From IMG/VR virus record IMGVR_UViG_3300027985_000918, positions 248,001 through 312,000 of that record: a DNA stretch of 64,000 nt; one strand, written 5' to 3'. The notes beneath the pieces are model-generated. The model had not been told where the DNA came from. It made no database searches and saw only the letters and a program-made list of their open reading frames with translations. The position numbers were made by a program, and so were the translations under genes. This document shows positions 11,168 through 59,313 of this stretch, in pieces (position 1 is the first letter of the stretch; each line of letters starts with the position of its first letter).

Positions 11168-11195
11168 GGTAACACCGAACCCTTAACGGGTAGGT
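11168..11195 (+). promoter_or_regulatory. Candidate ECF-like promoter GGTAAC-N16-GTAGGT
   Basis: Upstream of the plus-strand DUF4419 gene; the same architecture occurs at 46860, 47199 and 59286. Confidence 0.55.
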
Positions 11196-11240
11196 GAGCA
11201 GGGCTAAGCGAAGAAACCTGCGAGCCTATCAGGAGGACCT

Positions 11241-12305
11241 GTGAGCTATACTTTTCAGGTGGGGGACTTCCCCATCGGTGAACACTTCAAGAGGAGCCGA
11301 CCCCCCATGCGCCATTGGCTAGCGGGTCGAGGGGATCACCGGGAACGTGACAGGAACTCGGTCCAGAGCAAGGTACAGGGGGTCACCCTCTACAGCTCCC
11401 CCACCGAAACCGTGGGCGGGACCAGCCCCTTGTTCCACACGCTGGGGTACGCCTTCAACAGCCACTGCCCGATGGTGCTCACCCCAGACTCGGTCTGGCT
11501 CACCATCCTCACCGGCCTCACCCACCACATCGACACAGACCCCGAAGGCCTGCGGACTCATTTCGTGAACTTCGAGGGGCGGCAAACGCTGACGTACCTC
11601 GCTGGGGGGGACCGCTTCTCCAAGGACTACCCAAACATCGTCATCCCCTACTTCGCAGAACAGCTCCAAGACTTCATCGGCAAGAAGGCCGACCTCATCG
11701 TCAACAACTTCAGCACCACGACGCCAGAGGACCGGGTCTCGTCCCAGGTGGCCCTCATGGGGGCCATGAAGCACTGGTTCGATTACAAGATGATGTTCTG
11801 CTGCAACCTCACCCGGATCACCGTCGAGGGGACCCCAGAGGACTGGGGCAACATCATCGACCGGGCCGGGGCCCTGACCGAGTTCGGCCTGGGGTGGTGG
11901 ACAGACCACCTGATCCCGATCCTCGACGAGATTCGCAAATCGGCGGAGGGCACCCCGAGCATCGAGTTCTGGAAGAACGCCTACCTCAAACACCGCAAGG
12001 GTTCGGGGAGCCAGTACGATGTGTCCGGCTGGATCAACGCCCTCTACCCCTACGTGGCGGGCACAAAGGGGAAGATGCGGCAGAACCCCTACGTGGACTG
12101 GCAGAAGGACCACGGGGGGCGCTACCCGGGCCTCGATTCCGACGATTTCCCGCTGGGGATCGTGAAAGCTCCGGTCGAAATCAACGACAACGGCCACGTC
12201 GTCCGGGCCGAGTTCGTCGGAGGCCTCGTGGGAGTCTCCATGGCGGACGACTTCACCGTGAAACCCGTCTCCGGAATCGCTCTCCAGGAATTGGAGGAAG
12301 CATGA
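11241..12305 (+). CDS. DUF4419 domain protein
   Basis: 354 aa; H.P.VL.PD.VWL.I, FVNFEG, FSTTT..D, LMG.MK.WFDY, IT.EGT.EDW and SGWI..LYP motifs; AGGAGG RBS before GTG. Confidence 0.85.
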   Translation: MSYTFQVGDFPIGEHFKRSRPPMRHWLAGRGDHRERDRNSVQSKVQGVTLYSSPTETVGGTSPLFHTLGYAFNSHCPMVLTPDSVWLTILTGLTHHIDTDPEGLRTHFVNFEGRQTLTYLAGGDRFSKDYPNIVIPYFAEQLQDFIGKKADLIVNNFSTTTPEDRVSSQVALMGAMKHWFDYKMMFCCNLTRITVEGTPEDWGNIIDRAGALTEFGLGWWTDHLIPILDEIRKSAEGTPSIEFWKNAYLKHRKGSGSQYDVSGWINALYPYVAGTKGKMRQNPYVDWQKDHGGRYPGLDSDDFPLGIVKAPVEINDNGHVVRAEFVGGLVGVSMADDFTVKPVSGIALQELEEA

Positions 12306-13024
12306 AACCTTCTGAACTGTATGCCCGTACCCCGTCCGCCGTGAGCTACAACCTATACTTGCTCAGCCGAGTCCTGGAGGAAGAGGGGCTGTACAACATC
12401 GACCCCGGGAGCAGAAACCAAAAACTCAGGAAGGTCGAGATCCGCATCTACAAGGACTTCGTCTTCGATGATCGTCGCACATGGACACTGCTCTCGGCCT
12501 TCTTCGAGGGGAAGCCCGTATTCATCCTCCAACAAGCAGGGAGAGAGGGGGGTGACCACACCGAGACATTCATCACCGACCGTGAGCAGTGGCTGGGGCT
12601 GATCTACTATGCCCGGTCCCTATGCCCCGAGGACGACAACCCGGTGTACGATCCAGAGGAGGACATCGAGAACTTGGACCAGTTCTATGGATGCTCCCTG
12701 AGCACTACCGACTGGGACGGGATCTCCCGCAGGGATATACTGTACTGGGCGGGGAATGGATTCTTCTCCGAAGGGACGCCCAAGTGGCTCAAGACTCTGA
12801 CGGGCCTTACCGGAGAGGCAGCCCTCCAGGGAAAACTGGGGAGCTACAGCCACCCCGAAGAACTCGTCTACCTGATCGGGGAGCACCTTGTCACCCTGTG
12901 CCCCACGAACACCACCTTCGTGGTGAAGGTGGACGGTGAGACCATCATCGAAAGGGCCTACCCCCTCTGGGAGGAGCTGCGGGAATACATCCGCTGCTCG
13001 GTCATCGAGTTCGCCTCGAAGTAA
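12302..13024 (+). CDS. Hypothetical protein (about 240 aa)
   Basis: True start likely the ATG at 12302 (ATGA overlap with the DUF4419 stop, GGAGG upstream) rather than 11894. Confidence 0.7.
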   Translation: MKPSELYARTPSAVSYNLYLLSRVLEEEGLYNIDPGSRNQKLRKVEIRIYKDFVFDDRRTWTLLSAFFEGKPVFILQQAGREGGDHTETFITDREQWLGLIYYARSLCPEDDNPVYDPEEDIENLDQFYGCSLSTTDWDGISRRDILYWAGNGFFSEGTPKWLKTLTGLTGEAALQGKLGSYSHPEELVYLIGEHLVTLCPTNTTFVVKVDGETIIERAYPLWEELREYIRCSVIEFASK

Positions 13025-13903
13025 TCACCCTCCCAGGGGATCCCGGATCTCGTCGGTCACGTCTGCGAACGTGAAATCGAGAAACCCCACCTTCATACTG
13101 GACCGGAAGGCCCTAACCTGCTCGGGGCCCTCCAGATCGAACAGCAACTCGTAGAAGTCATTCACCAGGCTGGGCACCGTTAGCCCAGTCGAAAAGCGCT
13201 CCCCATCAAGGACTGGGAGGGCATCAAGACTCCCTCCGAAGGCCTGCATGAGAACCTGGTCCCGCTCCAAAGTGAGCTGCTCACGTAGGTCCATCTGCTT
13301 GATGATCCTCCATTCGAGGTCTTGCAACTTCTCCTTGATGGCCTGGTTTGCCCACTCCCTCATCTTGTTCATGGCCTTGGCAGTGGTGAGATCCGACTGG
13401 CTGACCCGCCCACCGAGACGTGCAGGGTAGTACCTATTCGTGTTCAGGTATCCCCCCTGGTGTCCCGTATACCCCGAGCCCCCCGTCTCGTGGGCAGGAT
13501 TGTTGGCCTCCACACTCCGAGGAGCCACCACACCACCGTGAGGGTAGGTGGTTCCAAGTCTAGGGGTCCCGTCGTCGGTCTGCCCCATCAACCGAGTCAT
13601 GTCCGGCATCCAGAACGGAGAGATATCCAGAGGGTTTCCTCCGTTGGCGATGTACGCCTGTACCAACTTTTCCAAAGTCGAATTGGGAGTCACGCTGACC
13701 CCCATCCGCTCTTCTGTGACAGCGTAGGACCCGTCTGGGTTCACTATCTGACGGTACTCCACCTGCACAAAGCCGATCCTCTCGATCTCTGCGTTCAGGG
13801 TGTTGATACGAGAAGCTACGTCCCGCCGCTCCCTCAGCAGCCATGAGCTGAACGCCCGGAAATATCCCGGGGGGAAGAACGACATTTTGGAGAAAGAGGC
13901 CAT
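13025..13903 (-). CDS. Hypothetical virion-associated protein
   Basis: 292 aa ORF with GAGG RBS, in the structural operon. Confidence 0.7.
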   Translation of the reverse strand: MASFSKMSFFPPGYFRAFSSWLLRERRDVASRINTLNAEIERIGFVQVEYRQIVNPDGSYAVTEERMGVSVTPNSTLEKLVQAYIANGGNPLDISPFWMPDMTRLMGQTDDGTPRLGTTYPHGGVVAPRSVEANNPAHETGGSGYTGHQGGYLNTNRYYPARLGGRVSQSDLTTAKAMNKMREWANQAIKEKLQDLEWRIIKQMDLREQLTLERDQVLMQAFGGSLDALPVLDGERFSTGLTVPSLVNDFYELLFDLEGPEQVRAFRSSMKVGFLDFTFADVTDEIRDPLGG

Positions 13904-13911
13904 ATTTCACC

Positions 13912-16953: not shown

Positions 16954-17189
16954 TAGCTACCTCCCCCGTGCTTAATCAGGGCGAGCTTCTGCAAGGCCTC
17001 AGCCTTCTTGCCTTCCCACTCTGCGAGCTGCTGCTCCAGGATGCTGCGAAGGCTAAGGAGTGCCCGAGCCTGCTCGGTGGCAAATGCTGGACGAAACGTA
17101 GTCCCCCCACCGGCATCCCCCCAGGCCCCAGCCTTCCGGCCAATCTTCTCCAACTCCTGCCGAGCCTCTTCGGGTGTCAACGGTTTCAT
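16953..17189 (-). CDS. Small hypothetical coiled-coil protein
   Basis: 78 aa; overlaps both neighbours (ATGA and TAATG). Confidence 0.65.
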   Translation of the reverse strand: MKPLTPEEARQELEKIGRKAGAWGDAGGGTTFRPAFATEQARALLSLRSILEQQLAEWEGKKAEALQKLALIKHGGGS

Positions 17190-26100: not shown

Positions 26101-28888
26101 CCTCACCCAACACCTGAAACGAGAACGCCCCCCCCTCGGACACCAGGAGCCCCCCTCCGATCCCTGGAGCATTCAGCAACGAGTTGCCGATGACGGAAGC
26201 AGATCCCAGGTCGATAGTTGTTGTAGGTTGCTGGAAAGTCGTGCTCAGAGAGCCTTCGGCCAGCCACAGGAAACGGCGCTCTGCGAAGTCGTGGAGGATG
26301 TCTTCGTAGTGAATGAGGGGCTTGTTGACTACCACCACCCCGTCCGGGTCTTCAATGGCGGTGACCAGGTTGAAGAACACCCCGTCCGAGTAACCCGCCA
26401 CATCTTGGAGGGGCGGATTCTGAAAGAACACGAAGGGGCCGGGCTGGACGGACTCCTGGACGATGGCGTCTTCGATACGGTCGAACGCCTTGAAATCGGG
26501 AATCCCTTTGGCCCTCCCCCGGTTCCTGGGACTGCGGTACAGCCCCAGGGCAACCCCGGAATCAGGTAGCCAGTTGTCCACTCCGCCCTGCGCCCGCCAA
26601 CCCGGAAGGAACCCGAGCTTGGCTGCCCCGGACAGATCCTTCACTGGCCCGCCCCATCCAACCTCCACCGTCCCCGTCGCCGGATCCCCCGCCTCCAGAA
26701 CGACCGACCCGTTGGAGGCATAGGCCCTACCCGTCCCAGAGATTGCGGCATTGATCGAATCAGCCACTTCCTCCGGGGTGAAGTAGTCCTTGTCTGGGTA
26801 GGCAGTCAACAGGGTGTTCGAGTTCCAAGAGTATCCCGACCCGTCGGTGCTGAAGTACAGCACCTCACCCCCCTCGAACCGGAACACAAACCGGGTCTTG
26901 GAGTACAAGCGGGCGGCCGTCGTGTGGGCAGAAGGCGTCAGGCTGGCCTGGAGGAAATAGGCAGCGTCGGCTCCTTTCTCCTTGAGGTCTGCACGGCTCA
27001 TCTTGAGCACCGACCCCAGACCATCGGAGAACTCACGGGAGATGTAGCAGACCCCCTTGGGGATGCTATGGGAGGTCGAGGGGAGGTCATCCTCCCGGTC
27101 CACCACCACCACCGACATGGCACCCTTGCGGGTGAACACGATGGTGTCCCCTACCGTGTCCTCCACCTGACGGATTCGTCCTTTGGCGTTAGCAGCAAAC
27201 GTATCGCCTCCAGGACGAACATCGGCCGGCGCCCCAGAACCCGCGGGGGCGACCCCTGTGCCGTCGGGGAAATCCATGACCCCCGAAACACCCAACCCCC
27301 GCTGCGGGCTGTTGAGAACGAACTCGTCGGGAAGGACGACAGCATCCGGGATGTACAGCTTCCCGCTGTTCTCCACAACCTGGGCGGGGGCCGTAGTGGG
27401 CTGAGGAAGGCCCGACAGACTGAGGCCGTCGTACACCACTTTGGCACCCAGATAATGCTTGTCGAACCGATCGGAGTCCGGATCCGTACTCCCCACCAGC
27501 CCCGGGGAGAACAGCAGCTTCCCTGTGGACAAAGATACCCCCACCTGGCCATCCGGCATCAACAAACCGGACAGCTCGGCGTCGTCCTCGACCAGGATGG
27601 GGGTCAAATACTTGCGTGACCCCACTCGGAGGAGGGGCCTATCCGTGGGAGACGGGATGGGGGTGATGAACAGAGTGTCGTGCGGGCTCAATTCCCCAAT
27701 GACGCCCGTACTTTCCGGAGCAAAATCACGATTGACGTACCAGACAGTCTTCCCGGCGTGCAGCTCGACGTAGGACGGGTTAAACACCAGCATCCCGTTG
27801 GTTAGGCCAACGACTCCGATGAGCTGGGGCTCCAGGGAGAAGTCAAAGCCTTCCTCCACCTGCTTGTCCAGGCGTACCCCGATCCCCAGAAAACTCCCGT
27901 CGGGGCCTGCTGCGGTACTGAGCCCATCCGGAGAGGACCCCAGACGGATCATGGCGTAGCTGTCAGAGACTGCCCCATTCCCGGGCAGGAAAAAACCGTT
28001 CTTGAGCCCCCTCGGTTTGGGGGATAGCTGGTAGACCTGATCGAACTCCAGACGGCCGAGGTCCCTCGGGGCATTGCCCTTGTACGGCTCCCAACGCTGG
28101 TTCTGCCCGTTCCACCCAAACCTAACTTGGTAACGATCGTTCCTGGTCCAGTAGAACCGGGGAGCAGCAATGGTGTACCGCACCTCGATGACTGTATCAC
28201 CTCGGGCTACACTGAGACCCCCCCCGAGGGCCGTAGAGATGTCACTCGCTACCAGACCGGATCCGGTAGGCCTGAAGATGTTGTCGTCCGTGAGGGTGAC
28301 CAAACCTGAGGAGGGGTCCGAATCCCCTCCCTGAGGCTGAACTACCAGGTATGGGATGTTTCCCTTGCGTCCGGAAGTAGGGTTCTCAGCATCCACCCAG
28401 CCGGCGTCGTCGTACTCCACATCCCCCCGGGCCACTACCAGGAACAGGATGCTCCCGATGCTGCGGAACCCATCGTCCTTGACGACGGCCTTTAGGGTCC
28501 CGTCTACCTGAGTCCCATACCCCGAAGGGATAGGCTGACCCTCGGGCCACGGATCCGGGTCATTGTCCGTGACCGTCAGGGAACCTTGGGGGATGATCCC
28601 CTCTCCCGTATCTACCCACCAGGCGGGGTCGTCGATAAGGGAGAGATTGGATGTGTTCTCCGCCCAGAACATGTACTCGACAGGGGTACTACCGGGGGAA
28701 TTGAGCACGGCCGTGCGGTACTGGTCCGCACGCACGTCCGCAAAGTCGGGGGCACCCAGAGTGTAGTCTGGCGGAAGGTCATCGGAAAGGGCACGGACGA
28801 CTCCACTGTCTGCGTCAGCCGTCTCGGGAGAGTTCGTCGGCGCAGACCGGGGGGGCCGGAGGACGTATCCTGAGAAGTCAAAACCCAT
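17186..28888 (-). CDS. Giant (3900 aa) virion structural protein, probably baseplate-associated
   Basis: Uninterrupted 11.7-kb ORF, Gly/Val/Asp/Pro-rich, located between spike and wedge genes. Confidence 0.8.
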   Translation of the reverse strand: MGFDFSGYVLRPPRSAPTNSPETADADSGVVRALSDDLPPDYTLGAPDFADVRADQYRTAVLNSPGSTPVEYMFWAENTSNLSLIDDPAWWVDTGEGIIPQGSLTVTDNDPDPWPEGQPIPSGYGTQVDGTLKAVVKDDGFRSIGSILFLVVARGDVEYDDAGWVDAENPTSGRKGNIPYLVVQPQGGDSDPSSGLVTLTDDNIFRPTGSGLVASDISTALGGGLSVARGDTVIEVRYTIAAPRFYWTRNDRYQVRFGWNGQNQRWEPYKGNAPRDLGRLEFDQVYQLSPKPRGLKNGFFLPGNGAVSDSYAMIRLGSSPDGLSTAAGPDGSFLGIGVRLDKQVEEGFDFSLEPQLIGVVGLTNGMLVFNPSYVELHAGKTVWYVNRDFAPESTGVIGELSPHDTLFITPIPSPTDRPLLRVGSRKYLTPILVEDDAELSGLLMPDGQVGVSLSTGKLLFSPGLVGSTDPDSDRFDKHYLGAKVVYDGLSLSGLPQPTTAPAQVVENSGKLYIPDAVVLPDEFVLNSPQRGLGVSGVMDFPDGTGVAPAGSGAPADVRPGGDTFAANAKGRIRQVEDTVGDTIVFTRKGAMSVVVVDREDDLPSTSHSIPKGVCYISREFSDGLGSVLKMSRADLKEKGADAAYFLQASLTPSAHTTAARLYSKTRFVFRFEGGEVLYFSTDGSGYSWNSNTLLTAYPDKDYFTPEEVADSINAAISGTGRAYASNGSVVLEAGDPATGTVEVGWGGPVKDLSGAAKLGFLPGWRAQGGVDNWLPDSGVALGLYRSPRNRGRAKGIPDFKAFDRIEDAIVQESVQPGPFVFFQNPPLQDVAGYSDGVFFNLVTAIEDPDGVVVVNKPLIHYEDILHDFAERRFLWLAEGSLSTTFQQPTTTIDLGSASVIGNSLLNAPGIGGGLLVSEGGAFSFQVLGEDYLLPNDGIPGNAVLITRYGDLALFGGRGAYSAGGSLFTDPAANFLEPSEEQATDTEGNPLFSGGAAVYLPVVREGYRLKLLSGDEAGSYLVESVSSGTELGVKPPFLAQALQAIPWELYRGYSEDVYDPAVVADQVYQNFSHLPDEPFKVNVLSPLGFVGGALTANVEGAVSRGRVISIRFGLAHDDGTNSAILTPLSREVLGAIANNLLDVPGVGSTRFTGIRYSLRVGADKFTPVHVGVFSDPVPAGAVEVLTQSVGVDPAGRIKFADDLLSRYAKARVTYQEEFRASADMVSGMAEYNPDSGLLNIGSADQISHAGKRVYFVEQMITENGLDVSLNPIAGTVGFQQPLQALQSVEVRYYQADMEGRKEGELVEEFLPVFVTKTEATRVNHFTFTFNTDSRTVDTRIDPTVFIGAMIQNFQGDDYILESPDDPGDPFKITFLSKTIPDHVPVQVSYAVLEANGGERSYTVSSAPVYRPPFFLKAGVDSFGLQGNRLADFFPGQLIRLGANCFYVKAVEYFPPRTTPLEERNPLNPVKPIVKAGNVTKVHIFPPTSREVGTRSPGHDVLTVISAGPVTTAVDPDGTNPVTTSAPAGFMQAVPLSEFPFEPVNKGQKTINFRGNLTQFAIAGHILEIGGYPFTIASAELNPEGTYTKITLTAPVETGLSMDNVSTVKLSYRPLYPPGVRTFLPLGPLVDTEGYELVLFGETDVNGNELPGRTLIPNIEYSLDPTTGVVELLEPVQAPLGPGQKLILSHTRLRTLSPTVQDGVVVEPRGFATYLYNTLPDRDNGLLGGLLQATYSFRSPDTYYFRIPTLTSFLAEAIREAVKEAQANQAGKGSLTTTTQGEENWDKGNTSLIWERRHLVDKDRAARVLLDYYNQAIMAFEQITETIDGRFVGDKDGKFRFFVGRGLEWPTPGYEDEITGVLQPKNLWSMVVNEADPSNDLIFLETDNLVEPTAATLVDGVLGGPYPDADRLQWLMDHQRMLVTNDVDDRVAASKRRPRIKLLPVYPYFSLQGGVDFKRMSSSHFLSRLFPTQAKAFFLTYPGIGADEATGDPGIYTYGRSIDGGIKRTTGSEIGLVSNPVLGGITNISDSALRPRRARARVWGYFPDGILQDAFDVGVPAADIVEPCMIVTQLPLSEVPVSPESGLLDVSRLISQGGDLADAEAGDPELALPGFVTGDQIFWGQPDGSTHIGQNVSLLSVFGTPVLDTLHVYDVQFGCLIRFADSSGTLLDNPNNILVGTEGILGTPLHEFPLEQGDTIYVSPTLGKGVEISDPPTIAELREMGSAIDIFRNGFDFSVKPDGRIVDTTLPSFDDPYFFGLKEIFGQKAPRPLSPLEGPVEFVYDRTLPLEFPALLGGSTDDDGDYAIPYLRSGNTELDRLGDASVMSNLFGVFAQSGGTYIYPDEIVGNDGEILDTSGNNFADVGTPFQGGPATKEAGVLMAGVDPFPAGVGEEALRPYDLLLMEVGQGTVPVGAEGLLNVAAVASPAAGVAFLEPPRFVTQTTPPVAPGGPTGSPVRYILNNAIVHVDGYVGDDPQNDPVSGCLLYEYDSNGDAVTDTLVLDFSSITQLALNDGTAAGTGNLNSIWSAAGAKANNKITVRFLARDDVLITNTPSGNPMPNGGDELFRIVIQGTDVTVTETVSGLPGLTALGLSAVFGTTDPAPLGAPFEQNRHIVITGASVGSLMDHLLLGLPVAQGSVQVLPGCAAGDQVVISGVVFTAVNGGAVAALQQFDDVAGSGSAIATATSLAAAINDPASQALIQAAAPLNISAVASAVGDLVGLQANHPGDVGELVVTENTGGLRLVVTPMAGDSTSTWFVPYTQLNPLAAGYRRALKYEYDVAIDIDTYNGWAAPRGESDTAYIDEDRLTFHEVIDFRKARLRGSVHPHPGSSTSLETDLLVQEVTCVAGVSSTINRNVNGGAPLTFIGKTAADIANELAGGTWSSPVGGSIKAVAFEGILDANVGATDIKFSAIPSSDVGPLGTICTGSGFMESENNADLSAVQFTLVEGRVMDPTINSGALARVEPGDVLVVKRSNDGTHRACTKAGTYLVKHAVGENDAINHVLQVTLSCTAGGGSGWITEVYPRVVGWDSGTGVLTVTSTSRFPGVGNRVFICRDLTKLSAATAAEYAQALWSGNITFKTPTTFTLNDLRDATGTPVAATDLVNTTGLMVAGHDSLTVDVRGNGLPDSSSVVGHHSLTALQEVIHGFRLVTFEGPGGAVVTYDATAGQITDVGGGGAIEVAEAARVSANQFHADADPVVYAHVAGSIDLSAVPDLDWGSIYDPLGHSAGQWVAALLPNTVVYLGDPTGPTPGFWAQSGIFLEPSFPTPVNSYSFTQARLVERTAAPYPLVGVRDFSDYNSSGVPYANPESVQFEVRRIRRFHRLFNDLGDQFGPLRYAYEIRRGRITTYSTTAKQFGLVEADGFGMTYNADVVTAPLAPDVWNGGETGLLGTNLGPFNSVDVNIHAGDMFRLLDEDGALIEQVPIVGVLSEVELKLEAPGLQTPKATLEANGGMRFEIWLRQAPVPHEQSAEQLLELITFKEVTRTDADYATERGGYVEAVTADYDSVVNRMRDDKNTGSWASKGVLRGDIVILDPTPKIPQSGERGARPIGDVGAYISGGPQRTGYDPGEPNILDDNRGFYRVTDIDGATLVVDGTCTLAGARVGGTTTDVVFPENATYQPILGYSILPTISGSALTGDGREGQMDLRPTKVRETIGGYETYTGDTHSIRPFSYRIIRPSQLFSDEAVDLVLMNRERVLSWIQELRSIMGGRKDGTYWDFQNELHAHDVGLPNDPLDGLGVLGNVSVTSLIGQVNISPYLNSEDCLSILDRRFWVLDRRLDSLMPDTNIGCRTYDGVNPFPTAGDVDLAQPVGAYTSFSADANGGSSVRPVLPERVDIVLDIEDRFRPTRYAWLAYRTDTVRGTLQRIDLFDEELPKRLAEAERVARLEESVENAS

Positions 28889-34800: not shown

Positions 34801-37140
34801 TGCCTTGCTCGGGGCATTCAAAATGTCCAGGCGGTTAATTGCCGAGAAAAACATCGACTTGGGGTCGTTGAAGTAGGCCGTCTCAAATGGGGCTGGGCGC
34901 CACCCGAACTGAGCCACCAAACGGTAGTCGATGTACTGACCTCGAACACCCCACTCGTTCTCGACCCCCGTCCCCTGAAGGTTCTTGAACTGGCTGCCTT
35001 TGACAGTGGCGTAGGTGGCCTGAGGCTCCTTCTCGTCTGTAGAGATCGAGATGATGTCGACGTCCTCGATGCGGTAGATCCTGGAACTGGAGGTATCCAG
35101 GTTGTACATCGGGGGCTTGAAGACGAAATCCCCATCCACATCCTGGTAAAACTCAAACCCCGTGATTTCCATAACCGCCTGGGCGATGTCGAGCTTGGAC
35201 CCGTACACCGACTCGAACATGGCAGGGGTTCCCCAATTGCCAATATCACTGACAAACGCCTGCATTTCTGCCAGGTTAAGCTCGAACTTGGTACCGCCCT
35301 TGGAATTGGAGTTACCGCTCGTGTTCCGAGCGAACAGGAGAGCTTCCAGTTTCCTCTGGTTGAACAGCCCCACACTGACAGCGTCCTCCATGATCTCCTT
35401 AGCCCGACCCTTCCGGGAGCTGGGATCGGAAAACCGGAACCTGACAAGCTGCTTGAGGGAGTCTGTGCTGTTACGGCCGAGAAACGTGCTCTGGGCAGCC
35501 GAAAACAGCTCCCCGCTGGCGCCGTGCATCCTCAGCTTGACCATCCGCTGGGCGAACCGCTTCTCCCAGTACCGAATGTTCAGGCTAAACAAGGACTCTC
35601 CGGCCACCTCAGAAACTGCCGACTGGTTGGACTTCGACGACATGGCCCAGCCAACGCCGCCCGCAGCTCCAACCATGTCGTGATGTAGGGTGTACATAAT
35701 CTGATAGGGGTGCATCCCCGTAAAATTGTGACCCACCATCGAAGTTTTGAGCTTCGAGTTGGAGGGCCTAGCTCCGAAGATGGAGGCATTGGTCGAGATA
35801 GTGTGGTACTGCCAGAAGTGCAACATCGAGACGGCGTTGACCGTCACCGTGTTGACGCCCCCCGACCAAGAATGAGCGACCTGAGTAACCACCCCGTGGA
35901 AAACGTGGTAGTAGGGGTAGCTCAGCAGATTTTCGATGCCCTTTCCTCCCAGCCCGTACTGATCCAGGAGAGAACCATTTGCGCCAACCCCAAAGGGACG
36001 AACAGGCACCAGATCCCCCCCAGAAGGCTCACCAGAGTCCTCCAACTCGGTGTTGGAGGCTGGGGGCTGAGGGCTGAAATCCCCCAAGTGCTCATTCCAG
36101 GGTTGCACCGATCCATTCGGCGGAGGCAGCTCTGCCACCCGCCCCTCCAAAGCAGAGAACCACGCCTGCCGCTGAGCGCCGGACTGGTTCTCACCCCCGA
36201 CCCAGACCCACTTGCGCTGGCTTCGGTGGTCCATGTGGGGGACATCGCTCCACTGGGGATTAGCGTTTGGCTCTTGGCCCCCCTTGAGATACATGCCAGA
36301 CCCACCGGGCGGAAGGTGCCCCGTCCGCTGAAGCCTTTGCATCGACGCCCACACCACAGTGCGATCCACGGCCTTGCCATTGGACGTAACGTACATATCA
36401 ACGGCTTGCCCAGTGTTATGGGCCGAATTCTCCACATGACCCCGGGCGGACACCCCCCCGTTTCCGGTAGCCCTAATGTTGACGTTCGTATAGCCCTGCT
36501 GCTCCAGGTACTGGTGCAAAGTGCTCATGGAGGCGGCGGTCTTATCGAGGTTGCTCGCAAACTGCTGGCGGCTGACCCCAGTCTCCGTCGTCCACTTTTC
36601 TGTCATATAGGGGGGGCTCTTCCCCGGCTCCAAGTACCCATACTCCCGCAGCTCTGCAATTCCCCTAGACCCAAACAGGGCCTCCCTCCCATAGCGCCCG
36701 CTACCCCCCTTGGCAGACTTCTGTCCAGAAAACTGGGCAGGTGGCGAAAGGGTCATTGCCTCCCCTGCTACCCCAAGACCCGCTTTCACCTGTGGCTCCG
36801 CCAGATTGTGAAACAACCCCTTCACGGGGAAATAACCCCGCATGTAGATGTGAACTTCGAGACCAGGGGTCAGGATGAACTTGGCATCCCGGGCAAAACT
36901 GTCCGAGTGGTGCAAAGGGATGGACAAAGTGAAGTTGGCCGATGCCGACCCCGGGTCAGTACCCGCATCCACCGACACCTCGGTGATGAACCTCTGGATG
37001 TCGATCCTACCGTTGCACTTTGGGCACCCCGGCAACGTGGTATCCCCGTTGATGTACACCAGAGCATCGGGGGTATGCTGCACCAGCTCCCGGCTGTCCA
37101 GTCGCCAAGTGCCAACGTATGGGCGATTCTCGATGCTCAT
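31894..37140 (-). CDS. Baseplate hub (gp27/gpD-like) protein with inserted M15-type Zn peptidase domain
   Basis: 1748 aa; GFEFYQDVDGDFVFKPPMY and IPVRPELRPGYPVYI hub-like motifs; SAHNTGQAVD...PHMDHR peptidase motif at residues about 239-306. Confidence 0.75.
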   Translation of the reverse strand: MSIENRPYVGTWRLDSRELVQHTPDALVYINGDTTLPGCPKCNGRIDIQRFITEVSVDAGTDPGSASANFTLSIPLHHSDSFARDAKFILTPGLEVHIYMRGYFPVKGLFHNLAEPQVKAGLGVAGEAMTLSPPAQFSGQKSAKGGSGRYGREALFGSRGIAELREYGYLEPGKSPPYMTEKWTTETGVSRQQFASNLDKTAASMSTLHQYLEQQGYTNVNIRATGNGGVSARGHVENSAHNTGQAVDMYVTSNGKAVDRTVVWASMQRLQRTGHLPPGGSGMYLKGGQEPNANPQWSDVPHMDHRSQRKWVWVGGENQSGAQRQAWFSALEGRVAELPPPNGSVQPWNEHLGDFSPQPPASNTELEDSGEPSGGDLVPVRPFGVGANGSLLDQYGLGGKGIENLLSYPYYHVFHGVVTQVAHSWSGGVNTVTVNAVSMLHFWQYHTISTNASIFGARPSNSKLKTSMVGHNFTGMHPYQIMYTLHHDMVGAAGGVGWAMSSKSNQSAVSEVAGESLFSLNIRYWEKRFAQRMVKLRMHGASGELFSAAQSTFLGRNSTDSLKQLVRFRFSDPSSRKGRAKEIMEDAVSVGLFNQRKLEALLFARNTSGNSNSKGGTKFELNLAEMQAFVSDIGNWGTPAMFESVYGSKLDIAQAVMEITGFEFYQDVDGDFVFKPPMYNLDTSSSRIYRIEDVDIISISTDEKEPQATYATVKGSQFKNLQGTGVENEWGVRGQYIDYRLVAQFGWRPAPFETAYFNDPKSMFFSAINRLDILNAPSKAAQVTIPVRPELRPGYPVYIKYLDAFYYCNGFSHSHSVGGQCTTNLQLVGKRAKFYAPGRPEGTGIDAIDLANTVLPPRPLHVADMTGHPRLAGFPNVVMALDPYAINPLFWVVGADIERLDDPVVLRNILQMGSQKGIGLVADQGDGRYTLTLPTKESGGETKATTVEFYLSDDTRLPEEVAAKGATKRSGTPGVVPKTTIDIIAAGEAYAKRQRAAGQKIEAKQKSLVALQGEVNSLTSSIARAGDGSKKAALLEKKRAKLAEIRGVLREVEAVRAETEASFGQDTGDGVYQLQFLIKAIGERYFLSGGQDLRRIPETHALLDMLSEKKASLSNGTQPGQYRYYSASHPDPQHQGQEIVEYSNPPDGTTPTLKRKNSFLDPEWQGTTVTGFVRTPSAVVPGTVKPEATLGEVQPTRGIRVLTANPARPNGEIVPTSQIRELMFSVQDMTQTKGTTDTGAASKPVTLGPGVLLRLKQRLNPKSVKKEPSGDQTTQEFYRLAWSSILADFTVASVAADRMARELDSGKTLPLPQTLPALPDSVVVSKGSFLEIGEVLSNYRLDDTRIAGVIPVTGGPPQLFWSSDQKSLGGKWGKKTIRDLLTFVGEKLAESLFQDLTRIRGAWVQAIKEAGYEDAHSERIFAEFNAVLAARWKVDVLAHSSTREKKQSTIRRKIHSPVFPVSDAQGYEVVGSYRYGRGVDIEPGGVWDSLHAQDPLQFLDRKTVEDIVDGIISGKTITVEQEKEINGGKKVRVQIPLSGKAATTDVERRALAQLRRNLTDKQILDLGLAVPNSQDPSLLQLNLSNWFADGNKEGIHKLPVNNAAFTLADLSYQQDGRVCSCKAAEADLLLEAFVDSNFLQFAQPGVQIPKGYGTGEEDRATQFLTNQAMFKSVAWQQRQDALRGAAMERPAGSLISTFQNLGNAVVQGATGESARQRAALTQYEQAKAQAKLAEQGVTQAFDNLFGED

Positions 37141-46859: not shown

Positions 46860-46888
46860 GGTAACAAACTTCCCTGAGGCGGGTATAG
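46860..46888 (+). promoter_or_regulatory. Candidate ECF-like promoter GGTAAC-N17-GTATAG
   Basis: About 60 nt upstream of the Hc1-like gene. Confidence 0.55.
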
Positions 46889-46947: not shown

Positions 46948-47124
46948 ATGCGCACCCAAATCGAGAACCTGATCAATCTGCTGACCAACACCCTCCCCGA
47001 CGCCGACAAGGTGGACATGGGGCAGAAGGCGGCGGGGACCCGAGTCCGCAAGGCCCTCCAGGCCGTCCGCACCGAATGTGCCAACCTGCGGAAGGAGTCC
47101 CTGGGGACGGAGAAGGTGGGCTGA
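46948..47124 (+). CDS. Histone H1-like (Hc1 family) small protein, 58 aa (below ORF-track cutoff)
   Basis: MRTQIENLINLLTNTLPDADKVDMGQKAAGTRVRKALQAVRTECANLRKESLGTEKVG; G.KAAGTR.RK...L..RKES is the Hc1-like signature; AGGAG RBS and its own terminator. Confidence 0.8.
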   Translation: MRTQIENLINLLTNTLPDADKVDMGQKAAGTRVRKALQAVRTECANLRKESLGTEKVG

Positions 47125-47145: not shown

Positions 47146-47185
47146 GAGAAAGCCCCTGCCAGAGTACCCTGGCAGGGGCTTTCTC
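47146..47185 (+). terminator. Intrinsic terminator-like hairpin
   Basis: Perfect 17-bp stem gagaaagcccctgccag / ctggcaggggctttctc with a 6-nt loop. Confidence 0.8.
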
Positions 47186-47198: not shown

Positions 47199-47226
47199 GG
47201 TAGCCAAGAATTCTCTTTGGGTGCAT
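47199..47226 (+). promoter_or_regulatory. Variant ECF-like promoter GGTAGC-N16-GTGCAT
   Basis: Just after the terminator and upstream of the phosphoesterase; context aaggtaggtagc resembles aagggtaggtaac at 11161. Confidence 0.4.
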
Positions 47227-47250
47227 ACGGTGGCGGGCACGGAGAACCAG

Positions 47251-48078
47251 ATGAAGATCATGACGCTGTCCGATCTCCACCATGGGAAGTGGGGAACCTG
47301 GGGGATGAAGGCTGTCCAGAGGGCAGGCAAAGAGGCCAGAGACCACCAAATCGATGTCCTCCTGTTGGGAGGGGACCTGGCGGAACCTTCCCCCGAAAAC
47401 CAGTACCGGGGTGAGGTACTCTCCAAGATCATGCAGCTTCCGATCCCCCACAAACTCTGGGTCATCGGGAACAACGACCTGGAGGACCTGCGGGGTCCGA
47501 TCAGCCAATATGCCCAGGAGGCCCACTCCCTAGTGAGTGCCGACGGCATTCAGGTCCTGGACTACGCCCCCGTCACCATCGACGGCGTGACCTTCGTGGG
47601 GAACCTGGGGTGGTTTGACGGGTCACTTTGGGGGATGGGATCTACCCCCCTCATCGACCCAGAAGGCTGGGCGCCTATCTCTTTCCAGGAGGCCCAGAGC
47701 AAAACGGACGCCTGGACCAGGCATGAGCTGGGTGAGAGGATGGACCTGACCTCGGATGAGCTGTTTGAGCTGTGCCAAAACACTTTGCACTCCCACCTGC
47801 GGGAAGCGGGACAAAACCGCATAGTGGTGATGACACACACATCCCCCACCCCGTCCATGTGCATGTACGGGCACAACCCAAAATTCGACTTCCTGAACTA
47901 CTGCATGGGCTGGGATGACCTGTCGAAGAAAGCCCTCCGCCCCCCATTGTCCTCCTGGAAGCCCACTCTCCAGCTCTGCGGTCACACTCACCGCTTCAAA
48001 ATGGTCTTTGCTGGGGAAAACCCCCCACTGGTGAACGTATCGGGAGAGGGCCAGCCCCGAATCTTCGAGATCAGGTAA
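47251..48078 (+). CDS. Calcineurin-like metallophosphoesterase
   Basis: SDLH, GGDL, IGNND (GNHD variant), THT.P and CGHTH motifs; start reassigned to the ATG at 47251 after GGAG. Confidence 0.85.
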   Translation: MKIMTLSDLHHGKWGTWGMKAVQRAGKEARDHQIDVLLLGGDLAEPSPENQYRGEVLSKIMQLPIPHKLWVIGNNDLEDLRGPISQYAQEAHSLVSADGIQVLDYAPVTIDGVTFVGNLGWFDGSLWGMGSTPLIDPEGWAPISFQEAQSKTDAWTRHELGERMDLTSDELFELCQNTLHSHLREAGQNRIVVMTHTSPTPSMCMYGHNPKFDFLNYCMGWDDLSKKALRPPLSSWKPTLQLCGHTHRFKMVFAGENPPLVNVSGEGQPRIFEIR

Positions 48079-48130: not shown

Positions 48131-48170
48131 AGGAGGACCGCCCTGGGGGGGTCCTCCTCCCAGGGCGGTC
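48131..48170. terminator. Hairpin(s) between convergent genes, likely terminator of the sheath gene
   Basis: 12-bp stem gaccgccctggg/cccagggcggtc, with an overlapping alternative 9-bp stem aggaggacc/ggtcctcct. Confidence 0.6.
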
Positions 48171-48175
48171 GATTC

Positions 48176-53494: not shown

Positions 53495-53512
53495 CTTCGT
53501 ACCTCTCTTCAA

Positions 53513-53696: not shown

Positions 53697-53711
53697 TATA
53701 GGCGTCCTACC
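53697..53711 (-). promoter_or_regulatory. Candidate late promoter motif (GGT-N6-CCTATA)
   Basis: Minus-strand GGTAGGACGCCTATA, about 200 nt upstream of the sheath ATG. Confidence 0.6.
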
Positions 53712-57998: not shown

Positions 57999-58009
57999 CT
58001 GGGGGTCTC

Positions 58010-58651
58010 CTATTCCTTGCCCGTCTTACTCTTCCGGGCCGCTTTAAGTGCCGCCGCAGCGTCGGCCACCCCGGTGCCCTTCGCTTCGGACCTCTTGACC
58101 TTAATGTCCCCCTTCACATCCGCCGACACGAGCTTGTCGGGGATGAACACAGGGGTGGGCTCATCCTGGATCGTACCCGAGGATTCCACCGACGTTCGAG
58201 GTACTGGAGAGCCAGCCACCTGCATGTTCGCCAGGGCGGCCAAGAGCCGGGACTCCATCCCTGCAAGCTGCACATGGACCTCTGCGGCTACCTCTTCCCT
58301 GGTGAGGCCTGGGGGGATCTTCTCCTCCAGTACCTGAGCCACCACTTGTGGGATCACCTGGATGAGCGCCGGAGGGGGGCTCGTGTGTGAAGTAGAAGGT
58401 GAAGCTAGGGGTTGGGGCAAAGGATTCTGGACCACGGGAGACACCCGGGGTCTCCGGGGAAGAGTTCTCCGCTCCTCAAACCTCTTGACGGGCCTAACGG
58501 AGACTGCCCCATTCTGACGAGCCCGGTGAAGATCCATTGATGCCTGAGCTTCCGCATAGGGGATGTACTGCTTGTCTCCCCGGTCGAGGGTCAGGCCCAG
58601 ATCTGGCAGCTCGATGTGTCGGCAAACGCCGGTGATTTCGGCTTCGATCAT
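58010..58651 (-). CDS. Hypothetical protein with Pro-rich linkers and basic C-terminus
   Basis: Start reassigned to the ATG at 58651 (ATGA overlap with the upstream stop); about 213 aa. Confidence 0.7.
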   Translation of the reverse strand: MIEAEITGVCRHIELPDLGLTLDRGDKQYIPYAEAQASMDLHRARQNGAVSVRPVKRFEERRTLPRRPRVSPVVQNPLPQPLASPSTSHTSPPPALIQVIPQVVAQVLEEKIPPGLTREEVAAEVHVQLAGMESRLLAALANMQVAGSPVPRTSVESSGTIQDEPTPVFIPDKLVSADVKGDIKVKRSEAKGTGVADAAAALKAARKSKTGKE

Positions 58652-59262
58652 TTGGTCGGATCCCCCTTGGCCAGATGCCGGACAATCTCCTCCACCAGTC
58701 TGCTCACGCACCTTTTCCTCCCCTTACGGATCGCCCTCTGCACGAAGGTAAACTTGGCGATACCCGGGTGAATCCAGGCGTCCTGTGTCTCGAAGGGGGC
58801 GAATCGGAGGATAACCCCTCCCCCCTTCTGCTTTAGGGGGACGATCAAAGGCAAACGCTCACCCTTGGATACCTTTCCCGACTTCTTCATACCCCTACGG
58901 CGTTCCCCGGGGGTCAGGTTGAACCGCTCAGGGTGCTCTTCTTTGTATTCCTGAGTCATCCAGGTCATTTTTCGGCTGGGGATGTCCCCAGAGGTCAGCT
59001 CTGGCATCCCATACCAGCTCGACTTGATGTCAATGGTGCTCTTACCCACGATGCGGAAACTCCAGGACTCCGCAAAATCGGGCCCCCCCTTCGGATCACG
59101 GACGGACCACCCCCTCTTGGCGAAGTCCTTGAGACCTTCCTCTATGATGGTCTCGATGAGGCACTTCGCCAGATCTTCCAGCACCTCCCGGGAGATTGGA
59201 ATCTTGGACATCTCCGACCAAGGTTTCCCATAGACACTCCGCACTCGACGGATATCACCCAT
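58648..59262 (-). CDS. Hypothetical basic protein, possible virion morphogenesis/neck protein
   Basis: 204 aa; WIHPG..K..F..RAI C-terminal motif seen in phage neck-region proteins. Confidence 0.55.
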   Translation of the reverse strand: MGDIRRVRSVYGKPWSEMSKIPISREVLEDLAKCLIETIIEEGLKDFAKRGWSVRDPKGGPDFAESWSFRIVGKSTIDIKSSWYGMPELTSGDIPSRKMTWMTQEYKEEHPERFNLTPGERRRGMKKSGKVSKGERLPLIVPLKQKGGGVILRFAPFETQDAWIHPGIAKFTFVQRAIRKGRKRCVSRLVEEIVRHLAKGDPTK

Positions 59263-59285
59263 GCGTCACCACACCGCTTCTTTCA

Positions 59286-59313
59286 GGTAACCCAAGCGGC
59301 CCCGCAAGTAGAT
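59286..59313 (+). promoter_or_regulatory. Candidate ECF-like promoter GGTAAC-N16-GTAGAT
   Basis: Upstream of the isolated plus-strand gene. Confidence 0.55.

What the first reader, a model, noticed from the sequence alone, without database searches (positions are those of the whole stretch)
11168..59313. Second promoter class (GGTAAC-N16/17-GTA) restricted to plus-strand island genes
Seen: GGTAAC-16-GTAGGT (11168), GGTAAC-17-GTATAG (46860), GGTAAC-16-GTAGAT (59286) and variant GGTAGC-16-GTGCAT (47199), each shortly before a plus-strand gene. These genes also share GGAG(A/G)ACC just before the start codon. Known: ECF sigma promoters have an AAC-containing -35, 16-17 nt spacing and a CGT/GTA-type -10. 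Inference: an ECF-sigma-driven early/middle regulon interleaved antisense to the late operon.
Basis: partly seen in the sequence, partly recalled or inferred. Interest (0 to 1): 0.7.

Follow-up and report, generated by a model that had tools for sequence, protein, structure and literature searches.

The report
Phage sigma-factor promoter class, genome-wide
The GGTAAC-N16/17-GTAG motif is a real promoter class with about 100 nearly invariant copies in a 402-kb uncultured huge phage; it is most likely read by host RNA polymerase carrying a phage-encoded ECF-like sigma factor, and in this window it drives small accessory gene cassettes inserted antisense into the putative structural operons.

Summary
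The motif is real. GGTAAC-N16/17-GTA occurs 5 times in the window (0.16 expected) and 97 times in the whole 402,383-bp phage genome (1.8 expected). It occurs almost only at spacings 16 and 17. Of the 97 copies, 92 are intergenic, and the -10 element lies a median 36 nt upstream of a same-strand start codon. Genome-wide it sits on both strands and is the main promoter of the non-structural half (5-221 kb), tRNA arrays included. Its restriction to plus-strand islands holds only inside the putative late region. The variant at 47199 is not a member (2 bits against at least 20). GGAG(A/G)ACC is mostly the ordinary Shine-Dalgarno sequence. No phage RNA polymerase was detected. The genome encodes two sigma-like proteins with both sigma2 and sigma4 domains. 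The better one (sigma-A, 373 aa) belongs to a large family found in huge phages and folds like ECF sigmas. A syntenic 436-kb relative uses G(G/T)CTTA-N17-GTAG upstream of orthologous genes. So the -10 is conserved and the -35 is swapped, which matches a conserved sigma2 and a hypervariable sigma4 helix in sigma-A. The sigma-to-motif link and the timing are inferred, because no RNA data were listed. This is a new member of a known kind.

The parts
11168..11193 (+). Class-2 promoter P1: -35 GGTAAC (11168-11173), 16-nt spacer, -10 GGGTAG (GTAG at 11190-11193). It lies back-to-back with a GCCTATAA element on the minus strand (11133-11139).
   Evidence: weight-matrix score 25.0 bits.
11241..12305 (+). 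Island gene 1: DUF4419 protein (354 aa). GTG start, GGAGG at 11232-11236.
   Evidence: Pfam PF14388, E=1.7e-69. Absent from the syntenic relative G001, where the flanking orthologues are 107 bp apart against 1939 bp here.
46860..46886 (+). Class-2 promoter P2: -35 GGTAAC (46860-46865), 17-nt spacer, -10 GGGTAT (GTA at 46883-46885).
   Evidence: 20.3 bits.
46948..47124 (+). Island gene 2a: 58-aa Hc1-like histone H1-like DNA-binding protein. GGAG at 46939-46942.
   Evidence: Pfam PF07432, E=1e-10.
47149..47182 (+). Strong GC-rich hairpin (11-14 bp stem, 6-nt loop) followed by TTTCTCGT. It is a possible terminator or attenuator between the Hc1-like gene and the phosphoesterase gene.
   Evidence: Read from the sequence. 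Not reported by the strict terminator scan.
47199..47226 (+). Rejected as a class member.
   Evidence: 2.1 bits against at least 20 bits for true sites.
47251..48078 (+). Island gene 2b: calcineurin-like metallophosphoesterase (275 aa). It is probably expressed by read-through from P2, or from an unrecognised promoter.
   Evidence: Pfam PF00149, E=6.8e-11; phrog_1649, E=8.6e-17. No sigma70-type promoter in 45000-49000.
59286..59311 (+). Class-2 promoter P3: -35 GGTAAC (59286-59291), 16-nt spacer, -10 CAAGTAG (GTAG at 59308-59311).
   Evidence: 25.2 bits.
59336..59779 (+). Island gene 3: 147-aa protein with no family match. GGAG at 59326-59329.
   Evidence: It is an insertion relative to G001, where the flanking orthologues abut.
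28129..28154 (+). Orphan high-scoring class-2 site, antisense inside the 3900-aa minus-strand ORF. It is either an antisense promoter or one of the roughly 2 chance matches expected per genome.
   Evidence: 20.7 bits, genic.
35292..35316 (-). Regex match (GGTAAC-N16-GTAC) inside the 1748-aa ORF. Probably chance.
   Evidence: 9.5 bits only.

Best explanation
GGTAAC-N16/17-(C)(G/A)(A/G)GTAG is the pre-late (early or middle) promoter of this huge phage. Host RNA polymerase core carries a phage-encoded, ECF-like two-domain sigma factor. The sigma4 helix-turn-helix reads the -35 hexamer GGTAAC. The sigma2 domain reads and melts the short GTAG -10 element. Transcription is expected to start some 7-10 nt downstream, giving a leader of about 25-30 nt that holds an ordinary GGAG ribosome-binding site.

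The favoured sigma is sigma-A (G000:C1:85015-86136, minus strand; L001:1165-2286:-). The sigma-A gene itself sits behind a sigma70-like promoter, so the host's primary holoenzyme would make it first. Within the window the promoter drives three small accessory cassettes: a DUF4419 protein; an Hc1-like histone, probably together with a metallophosphoesterase; and a 147-aa protein. These cassettes are lineage-specific insertions lying antisense between conserved minus-strand operons. Those operons carry a different, single-element motif, GCCTATA(G).

Shown: the motif's enrichment, spacing, position and orientation; the presence and fold of the sigma; and a matching motif upstream of orthologous genes in a relative. 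Inferred: that the motif is transcribed from, which sigma reads it, and when.
For: 1) Promoter-like statistics and geometry. There are 97 copies against 1.8 expected, and only spacings 16 and 17 are enriched. 92 of 97 are intergenic. 65 copies have a same-strand start codon within 150 nt, with a median of 36 nt from the -10 G. Others precede tRNA arrays. The flanks add conserved C at -3 and R at -1 of the -10.

2) No sigma70-type promoter was found in the three island regions.

3) No phage RNA polymerase was detected with PF00562, PF00623 or PF00940. A six-frame scan with TIGR02937 finds exactly three sigma-like genes, and only two of them have both sigma2 and sigma4.

4) Sigma-A matches TIGR02937 over model positions 19-163 of 165 (E=1.4e-10) and PF07638 Sigma70_ECF at 21.0 bits. 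Its AlphaFold model has pLDDT above 90 in residues 180-265 and 300-373, and the best PDB fold matches are the ECF sigmas SigH, SigL and SigE. A family profile hits PDB entry 3mzy, a sigma-H factor.

5) The syntenic relative G001 shares 164 of 372 genes. It uses G(G/T)CTTA-N17-GTAG: 61 copies at N17 against 0-4 at other spacings, and 55 of 66 are intergenic. 8 of 11 orthologues of class-2 genes carry it, against 4 of 142 orthologues of other genes (p=1.2e-8).

6) Other contigs that encode sigma-A homologues have their own dyads with a GTA-core -10 and different -35 elements: GGATCATC..GAGTAG, GGGGTTCC..CCGTA and GTTAAAA..CCGTAAGTAG.

7) Sigma-A's sigma2 is 72% identical between G000 and G001, whereas its sigma4 is 38% identical. 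The recognition helix is hypervariable across the family. Two homologues with near-identical helices (L040 and L041) have similar -35 cores, GTTNAA.

8) Sigma70-like promoters precede the sigma genes in both phages.
Against: No transcript or 5'-end data exist, because no RNA run could be listed. Sigma-A narrowly misses the curated cut-offs: PF07638 at 21.0 against 21.1 bits, and TIGR02937 at 41.0 against 42.9 bits as a protein. A second sigma-like protein, sigma-C, is also conserved in the relatives and shows the same pattern of a more conserved sigma2 (63%) than sigma4 (47%), so co-variation does not separate the two. The sigma-A gene has no class-2 promoter of its own, unlike many autoregulated ECF sigmas. 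29 of the 97 sites have no called gene within 150 nt. Gene calls and start codons come from my own simple caller. The host is unknown.
Confidence: 0.72

Rival explanations
1. The motif is a phage-sigma promoter, but the cognate factor is sigma-C (G000:C1:394592-396115, plus strand; 507 aa) rather than sigma-A. Sigma-A would then serve another class.
For: Sigma-C has weak but near full-length similarity to the two-domain sigma model TIGR02937 (E=1.3e-3 as a protein, model positions 25-162 of 165; 20.7 bits in the six-frame scan). It carries the most canonical sigma70-type promoter, conserved in both phages: TTGACT-N17-TATGGT in G000 and TTGACT-N16-TATTGT in G001. That fits an early gene that switches on the next class. 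It is conserved in G001, G002, G003, G004 and G007. Its sigma4 also differs between G000 and G001.
Against: The sigma assignment is weaker than for sigma-A. There is no Pfam sigma2 hit. The model has mean pLDDT 59, and its fold matches (E at least 0.019) mix sigmas with MarR/PadR-type regulators. The core of its recognition helix (RAA.L) is fairly conserved across phages whose -35 hexamers are unrelated. Its sigma2-versus-sigma4 contrast is smaller than in sigma-A.
Confidence: 0.22
2. A host-encoded sigma factor (an ECF sigma, or an unusual primary sigma) reads the motif. The phage sigmas would then serve other promoters.
For: The motif resembles cellular ECF promoters, with AAC in the -35, a 16-17 nt spacer and a GTA-type -10 (established knowledge). 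The host is unknown, so its sigma repertoire cannot be checked.
Against: Syntenic relatives have unrelated -35 hexamers upstream of orthologous genes, while the -10 is kept. Canonical TTGACx-N16/17-TAxxxT promoters precede the sigma genes in both phages, which suggests the host primary sigma has ordinary specificity. The near-invariance of about 80 perfect copies is typical of a dedicated factor. Relying on an inducible host ECF sigma for about 100 promoters would be fragile (inference).
Confidence: 0.08
3. The motif is not a promoter. It would instead be a binding site for a repressor or activator, a recombination or insertion scar of mobile cassettes, or a promoter for an undetected phage RNA polymerase.
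For: The window islands are insertions relative to G001, so a cassette-associated repeat is conceivable. Divergent phage RNA polymerases, such as those of the phiKZ type, often escape Pfam models (PMC7598289, abstract). A 126-bp tandem array carries 10 or more copies without ORFs.
Against: The motif has a strict bipartite architecture with a 16/17 spacer. Its orientation matches the downstream gene, at a fixed short distance to the start codon, and it also precedes tRNA arrays and conserved non-cassette genes. Orthologous genes in G001 carry the equivalent dyad regardless of any insertion. No beta, beta-prime or single-subunit polymerase signal was found.
Confidence: 0.05

Closest known systems
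Cellular ECF (group 4) sigma factors and their promoters, for example B. subtilis SigX/SigW, M. tuberculosis SigH/SigE and E. coli SigE
   Same: The sigma has two domains (sigma2 plus sigma4), by TIGR02937, the AlphaFold model and Foldseek. The promoter is stringent and bipartite, with AAC in the -35, a 16-17 nt spacer and a short GTA/CGT-type -10 (the consensus sequences are from established knowledge).
   Different: The sigma is encoded by a phage. It carries a conserved N-terminal extension of about 180 aa (a small beta-rich domain plus a disordered linker). It scores just under the curated cut-offs. There is no class-2 promoter upstream of its own gene. It controls about 100 promoters rather than a small stress regulon.
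Phage sigma cascades: Bacillus phage SPO1 (host SigA, then gp28, then gp33/34) and T4 (gp55 at late promoters)
   Same: The host-type promoters lie in front of the phage sigma genes. A phage-specific promoter class serves the bulk of the non-structural genes. A further single-element motif, GCCTATA(G), precedes the putative structural operons. The SPO1 logic is as described in PMC13401047 (abstract).
   Different: The sigma family is different and is ECF-like. There is no sequence-level link to gp28 or gp55 beyond a weak phrog_1740 hit. The motif sequences differ. The temporal order has not been measured here.
Sigma factors reported in jumbo and huge phages (Iyer et al. 2021, group 2 jumbo phages; Al-Shayeb et al. 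2020)
   Same: These are large phages without their own RNA polymerase that encode sigma factors to redirect the host enzyme (PMC7824862; PMC7162821).
   Different: Those reports describe minimal single-HTH sigmas, RpoD-like sigmas and sigma70 copies. In the passages I read they give no cognate promoter motifs. Here an ECF-like family is paired with explicit promoter dyads in several genomes. The only homologue in the GenBank phage collection is an unannotated 485-kb metagenomic phage, LR745208.1.
Orthogonal ECF sigma/promoter pairs used in synthetic biology (own knowledge, not checked in the library)
   Same: There are many sigma paralogues or orthologues, each with a private -35/-10 dyad.
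   Different: Here the diversity is natural, lies within one phage clade, and is concentrated in the -35 element and the sigma4 helix while the GTA -10 is kept. Orthogonality is untested.

Membership tests
ECF-type (group 4) sigma70-family factor (candidate sigma-A) | Has sigma2 and sigma4 domains, with no sigma1.1 or sigma3 | tested here: met
   TIGR02937 aligned over model positions 19-163 of 165. The AlphaFold model shows two helical domains (residues 186-265 and 296-372) joined by a short linker. The top Foldseek hits are the ECF sigmas SigH, SigL and SigE.
ECF-type (group 4) sigma70-family factor (candidate sigma-A) | Reaches the curated family score thresholds | tested here: inconclusive
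   PF07638 scores 21.0 against a 21.1-bit cut-off. TIGR02937 scores 41.0 against 42.9 bits as a protein, and 42.2 (43.5 with neighbours) in the six-frame scan. PF04542 and PF08281 are well below their cut-offs.
ECF-type (group 4) sigma70-family factor (candidate sigma-A) | Positive autoregulation, with its own promoter upstream of the sigma gene | tested here: not met
   There is no class-2 site upstream of the gene on its strand. A sigma70-like promoter sits there instead: TTGCAC-N17-TAGAAG in G000 and TTGACA-N17-TAGGAA in G001.
ECF-type (group 4) sigma70-family factor (candidate sigma-A) | Cognate anti-sigma factor encoded nearby | not tested
   Neighbouring genes were not analysed for anti-sigma domains. 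The conserved N-terminal extension could have a regulatory role.
ECF-type (group 4) sigma70-family factor (candidate sigma-A) | Binds RNA polymerase core and directs initiation at the motif | not testable with these tools
   The host is unknown and no RNA data were listed.
ECF-type promoter (the motif itself) | Bipartite -35/-10 with a fixed 16-17 nt spacer | tested here: met
   62 copies at N16 and 35 at N17, against 0-7 at any other spacing.
ECF-type promoter (the motif itself) | AAC in the -35 and a CGT/GTA-type -10 | tested here: met
   GGTAAC, and C-(G/A)-(A/G)-GTAG. In relatives the AAC is replaced (CTTA, ATCA, TTCC) while the GTA is kept.
ECF-type promoter (the motif itself) | Intergenic, oriented toward the downstream gene, at promoter distance | tested here: met
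   92 of 97 are intergenic. The median distance from the -10 to the start codon is 36 nt.
ECF-type promoter (the motif itself) | Mapped transcription start a few nt downstream of the -10 | not testable with these tools
   No RNA run was listed.
Housekeeping sigma70 promoter (TTGACA-N17-TATAAT) | Match to both hexamers in the island regions | tested here: not met
   No sigma70-type sites in 10800-13200, 45000-49000 or 59000-60000.
Phage sigma cascade (SPO1/T4-like logic) | Phage sigma genes behind host-type promoters, plus distinct promoter classes for later genes | tested here: met
   Met at sequence level only. Sigma70-like promoters precede sigma-A and sigma-C in both G000 and G001. The class-2 dyad and the GCCTATA(G) element are separate classes. 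Timing was not measured.

The most novel reading that the evidence does not exclude
A clade of uncultured huge phages carries a fast-evolving 'private' transcription code. In this reading, an ECF-like sigma keeps its sigma2 domain and the GTA -10 element, while its sigma4 recognition helix and the -35 hexamer co-diversify from phage to phage (GGTAAC, GGCTTA, GGATCA, GGTTCC, GTTAAA). That would give each lineage an orthogonal regulon of about 100 promoters. It could insulate the phage from co-infecting relatives, and newly acquired cassettes would be plugged in simply by carrying the local promoter.
Probability: 0.4. Interest if true: 0.7.

Novelty: new member of a known kind. Interest (0 to 1): 0.55.

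Why it matters
If confirmed, this gives a huge phage with almost no annotatable genes a readable transcription map:
- about 100 class-2 promoters;
- a separate GCCTATA(G) class in front of the putative structural operons;
- a few host-type promoters in front of the sigma genes.

It also links a large sigma family to explicit DNA motifs. The family is apparently uncharacterised: it has 543 representative clusters, no homologue in any cultured phage in the GenBank collection searched, and sits below the curated family thresholds.

The natural series of related sigmas, with a conserved -10 and swapped -35 elements, would be a ready-made test bed for how sigma4 specificity evolves. It could also supply orthogonal sigma/promoter pairs. 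Finally, it shows that the accessory cassettes inside the structural region are wired into the pre-late programme rather than the late one.

Tried and rejected
- RNA evidence. Two searches for sequencing runs listed only DNA metagenomes from a hydrothermal-vent study and no RNA run, so no reads were laid.
- Near-identical phage records. There was no megablast match in the phage collection.
- The exact GGTAAC-N16/17-GTAG motif in relatives. It is absent from the 20-kb sigma neighbourhoods of 55 IMG/VR loci and from five whole relatives, with 0-5 hits at control level. This led to finding different -35 hexamers instead.
- Crude dyad counting without a spacing control. It was dominated by coding repeats and base composition and was replaced by a spacing-specific test.
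- A possible extra class with GGTAG as the -10 and no -35. No shared upstream element emerged.
- Phage RNA polymerases. PF00562, PF00623 and PF00940 found nothing. The PF00940 control rang nowhere, so that search is uninformative.
- Annotation of the window's minus-strand proteins. PHROGs gave no hits for 10 proteins and Pfam gave none for the giant ORFs. Only a weak, sub-threshold sheath-initiator hit supports calling them 'structural/late'.
- Sigma-C. Its structure model was mediocre (pLDDT 59) and the fold search was ambiguous. A PDB sequence search found nothing.
- Literature. No paper in the library links GGTAAC to an ECF promoter.
- A protein-DNA complex prediction was not run, because the tool gives no verdict for DNA partners and the result would not have changed my odds.

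Full report
CONTEXT. The window is bases 248,001-312,000 of a single 402,383-bp IMG/VR virus record with direct terminal repeats. It was assembled from a hydrothermal-vent metagenome. GC content is about 60%. I called genes with a simple codon-bias ORF picker, which gave 372 genes covering 89% of the genome. Gene starts are therefore approximate. In the window, a chain of very large minus-strand ORFs (up to 3900 aa) is interrupted by a few short plus-strand genes.

THE OBSERVATION. GGTAAC-N16/17-GTA occurs 5 times in the window against 0.16 expected.
- 11168: N16, GTAG.
- 46860: N17, GTAT.
- 59286: N16, GTAG.
Each lies 28-65 nt upstream of a plus-strand start codon.

Genome-wide there are 97 matches against a mean of 1.8 (maximum 6) in second-order Markov simulations. 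The spacing profile is decisive: 62 copies at N16 and 35 at N17, but only 0-7 at every other spacing from 10 to 23. 92 of the 97 copies lie in the 10.7% of the genome that is intergenic (p about 2e-82). 65 have a same-strand start codon within 150 nt, with a median of 36 nt from the -10 G (interquartile range 30-54). Further copies precede tRNA arrays.

Aligning the sites extends the consensus to GGTAAC-N13/14-C-(G/A)-(A/G)-GTAG, with a weaker G..AA signal about 11-14 nt further on. The motif is strikingly invariant. 79 intergenic copies are perfect for GGTAAC plus GTAG, and only 24 intergenic sites have a single mismatch. On a weight matrix the scores are bimodal: 103 sites score at least 14 bits, and 98 of these are intergenic.

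WHAT IN THE FINDING DOES NOT HOLD.
- The variant at 47199 scores 2.1 bits, which is indistinguishable from background. The metallophosphoesterase gene behind it (47251-48078) is more likely reached by read-through of the hairpin at 47149-47182, or uses an unrecognised promoter.
- GGAG(A/G)ACC is essentially the phage's general Shine-Dalgarno sequence. GGAG precedes 248 of 372 genes. The 8-mer is only modestly more frequent at promoter-proximal genes (6/63 against 7/309, p=0.012). My start-codon choice used GGAG-like motifs, so only the extension beyond GGAG is an independent observation.
- The motif is not strand-restricted: 51 strong sites are on the plus strand and 52 on the minus strand. 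It is dense from 5 to 221 kb, sparse from 221 to 337 kb and absent from 337 to 402 kb. Inside the sparse region, which contains the window, it is mostly on the plus strand, antisense to the long operons. The same holds for the equivalent motif in the relative G001.
- Two further window matches were missed. Site 28129(+) scores 20.7 bits and lies antisense within the 3900-aa ORF; its function is unknown. Site 35316(-) scores 9.5 bits and is probably chance.

WHAT THE CLASS-2 PROMOTERS DRIVE. Genes downstream of class-2 sites elsewhere in the genome include RtcB RNA ligase, an NAD-dependent DNA ligase, a PARP-like ADP-ribosyltransferase, an AAA ATPase, a CoaE-like kinase, VWA and OmpA-domain proteins, and many orphans. 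They also include tRNA arrays; the genome has 30 tRNAs. None of these is recognisably structural.

In the window the promoters drive a DUF4419 protein, an Hc1-like histone-like protein and a 147-aa orphan. None of the three island regions contains a sigma70-type promoter.

Comparison with the syntenic relative G001 shows that two islands are insertions. The orthologues flanking island 1 are 107 bp apart in G001 against 1939 bp here. Those flanking island 3 abut in G001 against 574 bp here. The position of island 2 is also occupied by different genes in G001, with its own plus-strand promoter. The islands are therefore lineage-specific accessory cassettes, each with the local promoter.

OTHER PROMOTER CLASSES. 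GCCTATA occurs 15 times in the genome and 12 of these are intergenic. About nine lie 44-109 nt upstream of minus-strand genes between 236 and 336 kb. Four are in the window, at 4872, 11139, 46353 and 53703 on the minus strand. G001 has CTATAA(T)/CTATAG at the equivalent positions. This single-element motif is the likely late promoter.

A few canonical sigma70-like promoters exist, and 7 of the 16 TTGAC-N16-19-TAnnnT matches are intergenic. TTGACT-N17-TATGGT lies upstream of sigma-C, and G001 has TTGACT-N16-TATTGT at the same place. TTGCAC-N17-TAGAAG lies upstream of sigma-A, and G001 has TTGACA-N17-TAGGAA.

WHO READS THE MOTIF. No beta, beta-prime or single-subunit RNA polymerase was detected. 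Divergent phage enzymes could escape these models. A six-frame scan with the two-domain sigma model TIGR02937 finds three genes:
- Sigma-A (85015-86136, minus strand; 373 aa) aligns over nearly the whole model (E=1.4e-10, 41 bits, cut-off 42.9). It reaches 21.0 bits on PF07638 Sigma70_ECF, whose cut-off is 21.1.
- Sigma-B (202 aa) has two sigma4-like helix-turn-helix units and no sigma2.
- Sigma-C (507 aa) matches weakly but over positions 25-162 of 165.

The sigma-A family is large. It has 543 representative clusters at E no greater than 1e-3 and 234 at E no greater than 1e-30. 56 IMG/VR contigs carry it, many of them 200-618 kb long. In the GenBank phage collection it has only one homologue, in an unannotated 485-kb metagenomic phage.

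With a 38-sequence alignment, the AlphaFold model is confident (pLDDT above 90) for residues 180-265 and 300-373. Its best PDB fold matches are the ECF sigmas M. tuberculosis SigH and SigL and E. coli SigE. E-values run from 7e-4 to 2e-2, and TM-scores are low because the two domains are placed differently. The family profile hits the PDB sigma-H factor 3mzy at 5e-5. Language-model neighbours are viral and bacterial ECF-sigma clusters. Sigma-C's model is mediocre and its fold matches are mixed.

COMPARATIVE EVIDENCE. G001 (435,804 bp) shares 164 of 372 genes with long syntenic blocks, including all three sigma-like genes: A at 38%, B at 59% and C at 40% identity. The exact motif is absent from G001. 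De novo k-mer enrichment in its intergenic regions instead gave GGG(G/T)CTTA(T/C)(T/C)T-N-(C)AGAGTAGTCTAGG. That is G(G/T)CTTA-N17-GTAG, with 61 copies at N17 against 0-4 at other spacings, and 55 of 66 intergenic.

Orthologues of G000 class-2 genes carry this dyad in 8 of 11 cases, against 4 of 142 for other orthologues (odds ratio 92, p=1.2e-8). So the regulon is orthologous, the -10 (GAGTAG) is conserved and the -35 is replaced.

Other contigs that encode sigma-A homologues show further dyads, most of them with a GTA-core -10:
- GGATCATC..(A/G)GAGTAG (L033, 7 copies in 20 kb).
- GGGGTTCC-N15/16-CGTA (L032, 9 copies).
- GTTAAAA..CCGTAAGTAG (L041).
- GGGGTTCAAC..CCGTATAG (L040).
- GGTTAGTT..CGGTAC (L056).
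- TGTAA..CGTGCAG (L046).

In sigma-A the sigma2 region is nearly invariant across the family, whereas the sigma4 recognition helix is hypervariable. Between G000 and G001 the identities are 72% for sigma2 and 38% for sigma4. L040 and L041 have almost the same helix and share a GTTNAA core in their -35 elements.

This pattern is what a cognate sigma should show, and it favours sigma-A. Sigma-C shows a weaker version of the same contrast (63% against 47%) and is also present in most relatives. The assignment is therefore not settled.

MECHANISM (best estimate). The host primary holoenzyme transcribes the phage sigma genes from sigma70-like promoters. The ECF-like sigma, A rather than C, then directs core polymerase to about 100 GGTAAC-N16/17-GTAG promoters. 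These serve accessory, nucleic-acid-repair and tRNA genes, and the cassettes embedded in the structural region. A separate factor, possibly involving sigma-B, which sits next to a NusG/KOW-like gene and the clamp loader, serves the GCCTATA(G) promoters. The first step is supported only by sequence. The second rests on statistics, fold and comparative data. The third is conjecture.

NOVELTY. Phage-encoded sigmas with private promoters are a known kind, as in SPO1 and T4, and sigmas in jumbo phages have been reported (PMC7824862, PMC7162821). I found no description of this ECF-like family or of its promoter dyads. I rate it a new member of a known kind. The -35/sigma4 co-diversification is the most interesting open lead.

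Noticed in passing
window 4866-4872(-), 11133-11139(-), 46346-46353(-), 53697-53703(-): A second motif, GCCTATA(G/A), occurs 15 times in the genome and 12 of these are intergenic. It mostly lies 44-109 nt upstream of minus-strand genes in the 236-336 kb region. The relative G001 has CTATAA(T)/CTATAG at equivalent places. It is a likely late promoter with a single -10-like element. At 11133-11193 it sits back-to-back with class-2 promoter P1.
   Followed up: partly
L006:13464-13921 (= G000:C1 about 82.13-82.80 kb, outside the window): A 126-bp tandem repeat of about 4-5 units. Each unit holds a back-to-back divergent pair of perfect class-2 promoters, so neighbouring units would fire convergently over about 50 nt. 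No ORFs are present. It lies 2-3 kb from the sigma-A gene. It could be a sigma sink, a small-RNA factory or an origin-like region.
   Followed up: partly
L006:11449-11557 and G000:C1 83.27-83.34 kb, 86.26-86.35 kb (outside the window): Clusters of short GAAACTTT/AAAGTTTC repeats lie upstream of a class-2 promoter and upstream of the sigma-A gene. They are candidate operator sites for an unknown regulator of the sigma locus.
   Followed up: no
G000:C1:158402-158477(-), outside the window: A tRNA with anticodon CUA (amber-reading; ARAGORN labels it Pyl) lies between two class-2 promoters. TAG still ends 75 of 372 predicted genes, and the giant ORFs are intact under code 11. No recoding is evident or claimed.
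   Followed up: partly
window 46411-46854(+): A plus-strand ORF missed by my gene caller encodes two HTH_7/HTH_38-type DNA-binding domains of the kind found in homing-endonuclease and resolvase-like proteins (Pfam E=4.5e-9; phrog_517 E=2.9e-14). It ends 6 nt before promoter P2 and has no recognisable promoter of its own.
   Followed up: partly
window 46948-47124(+): A 58-aa Hc1-like histone H1-like protein (PF07432) is encoded by a phage and expressed from a class-2 promoter. By my own knowledge this family is known from Chlamydiae, so it may be a weak hint to a host in or near that lineage. It might also compact host or phage DNA.
   Followed up: no
L002:1150-1758:- (G000:C1:364554-365162, outside the window): Sigma-B is a 202-aa protein with two sigma4-type HTH units and no sigma2. 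It is 59% identical in G001 with both helices conserved. It lies next to a NusG/KOW-like gene and a DnaX-like clamp loader, which makes it a candidate late-transcription co-factor.
   Followed up: partly
window 17186-28888(-), 31894-37140(-), 39278-42571(-), 48176-53512(-): Giant ORFs of 1097 to 3900 aa, and ten mid-sized neighbours, have no Pfam or PHROG match. They are nevertheless conserved and syntenic in G001 at 32-55% identity. Calling the region 'structural/late' rests only on this layout and a sub-threshold sheath-initiator hit for 9928-11085(-).
   Followed up: partly
L006:5-9000 (G000:C1 about 86.9-96 kb, outside the window): A family of genes is built from 69-bp (23-aa) repeats with a W..NG..HREDGPA unit that looks MORN-like. 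Several of these genes are driven by class-2 promoters.
   Followed up: no
G000:C1 8.7-8.83 kb, 45.43-45.52 kb, 48.48-48.58 kb, 153.83-153.91 kb (outside the window): In several places a class-2 promoter is followed about 95 nt downstream by a sigma70-like TTGAC-N16-19-TAnnnT site, often ahead of tRNA arrays. These may be tandem promoters that allow expression in two phases.
   Followed up: no
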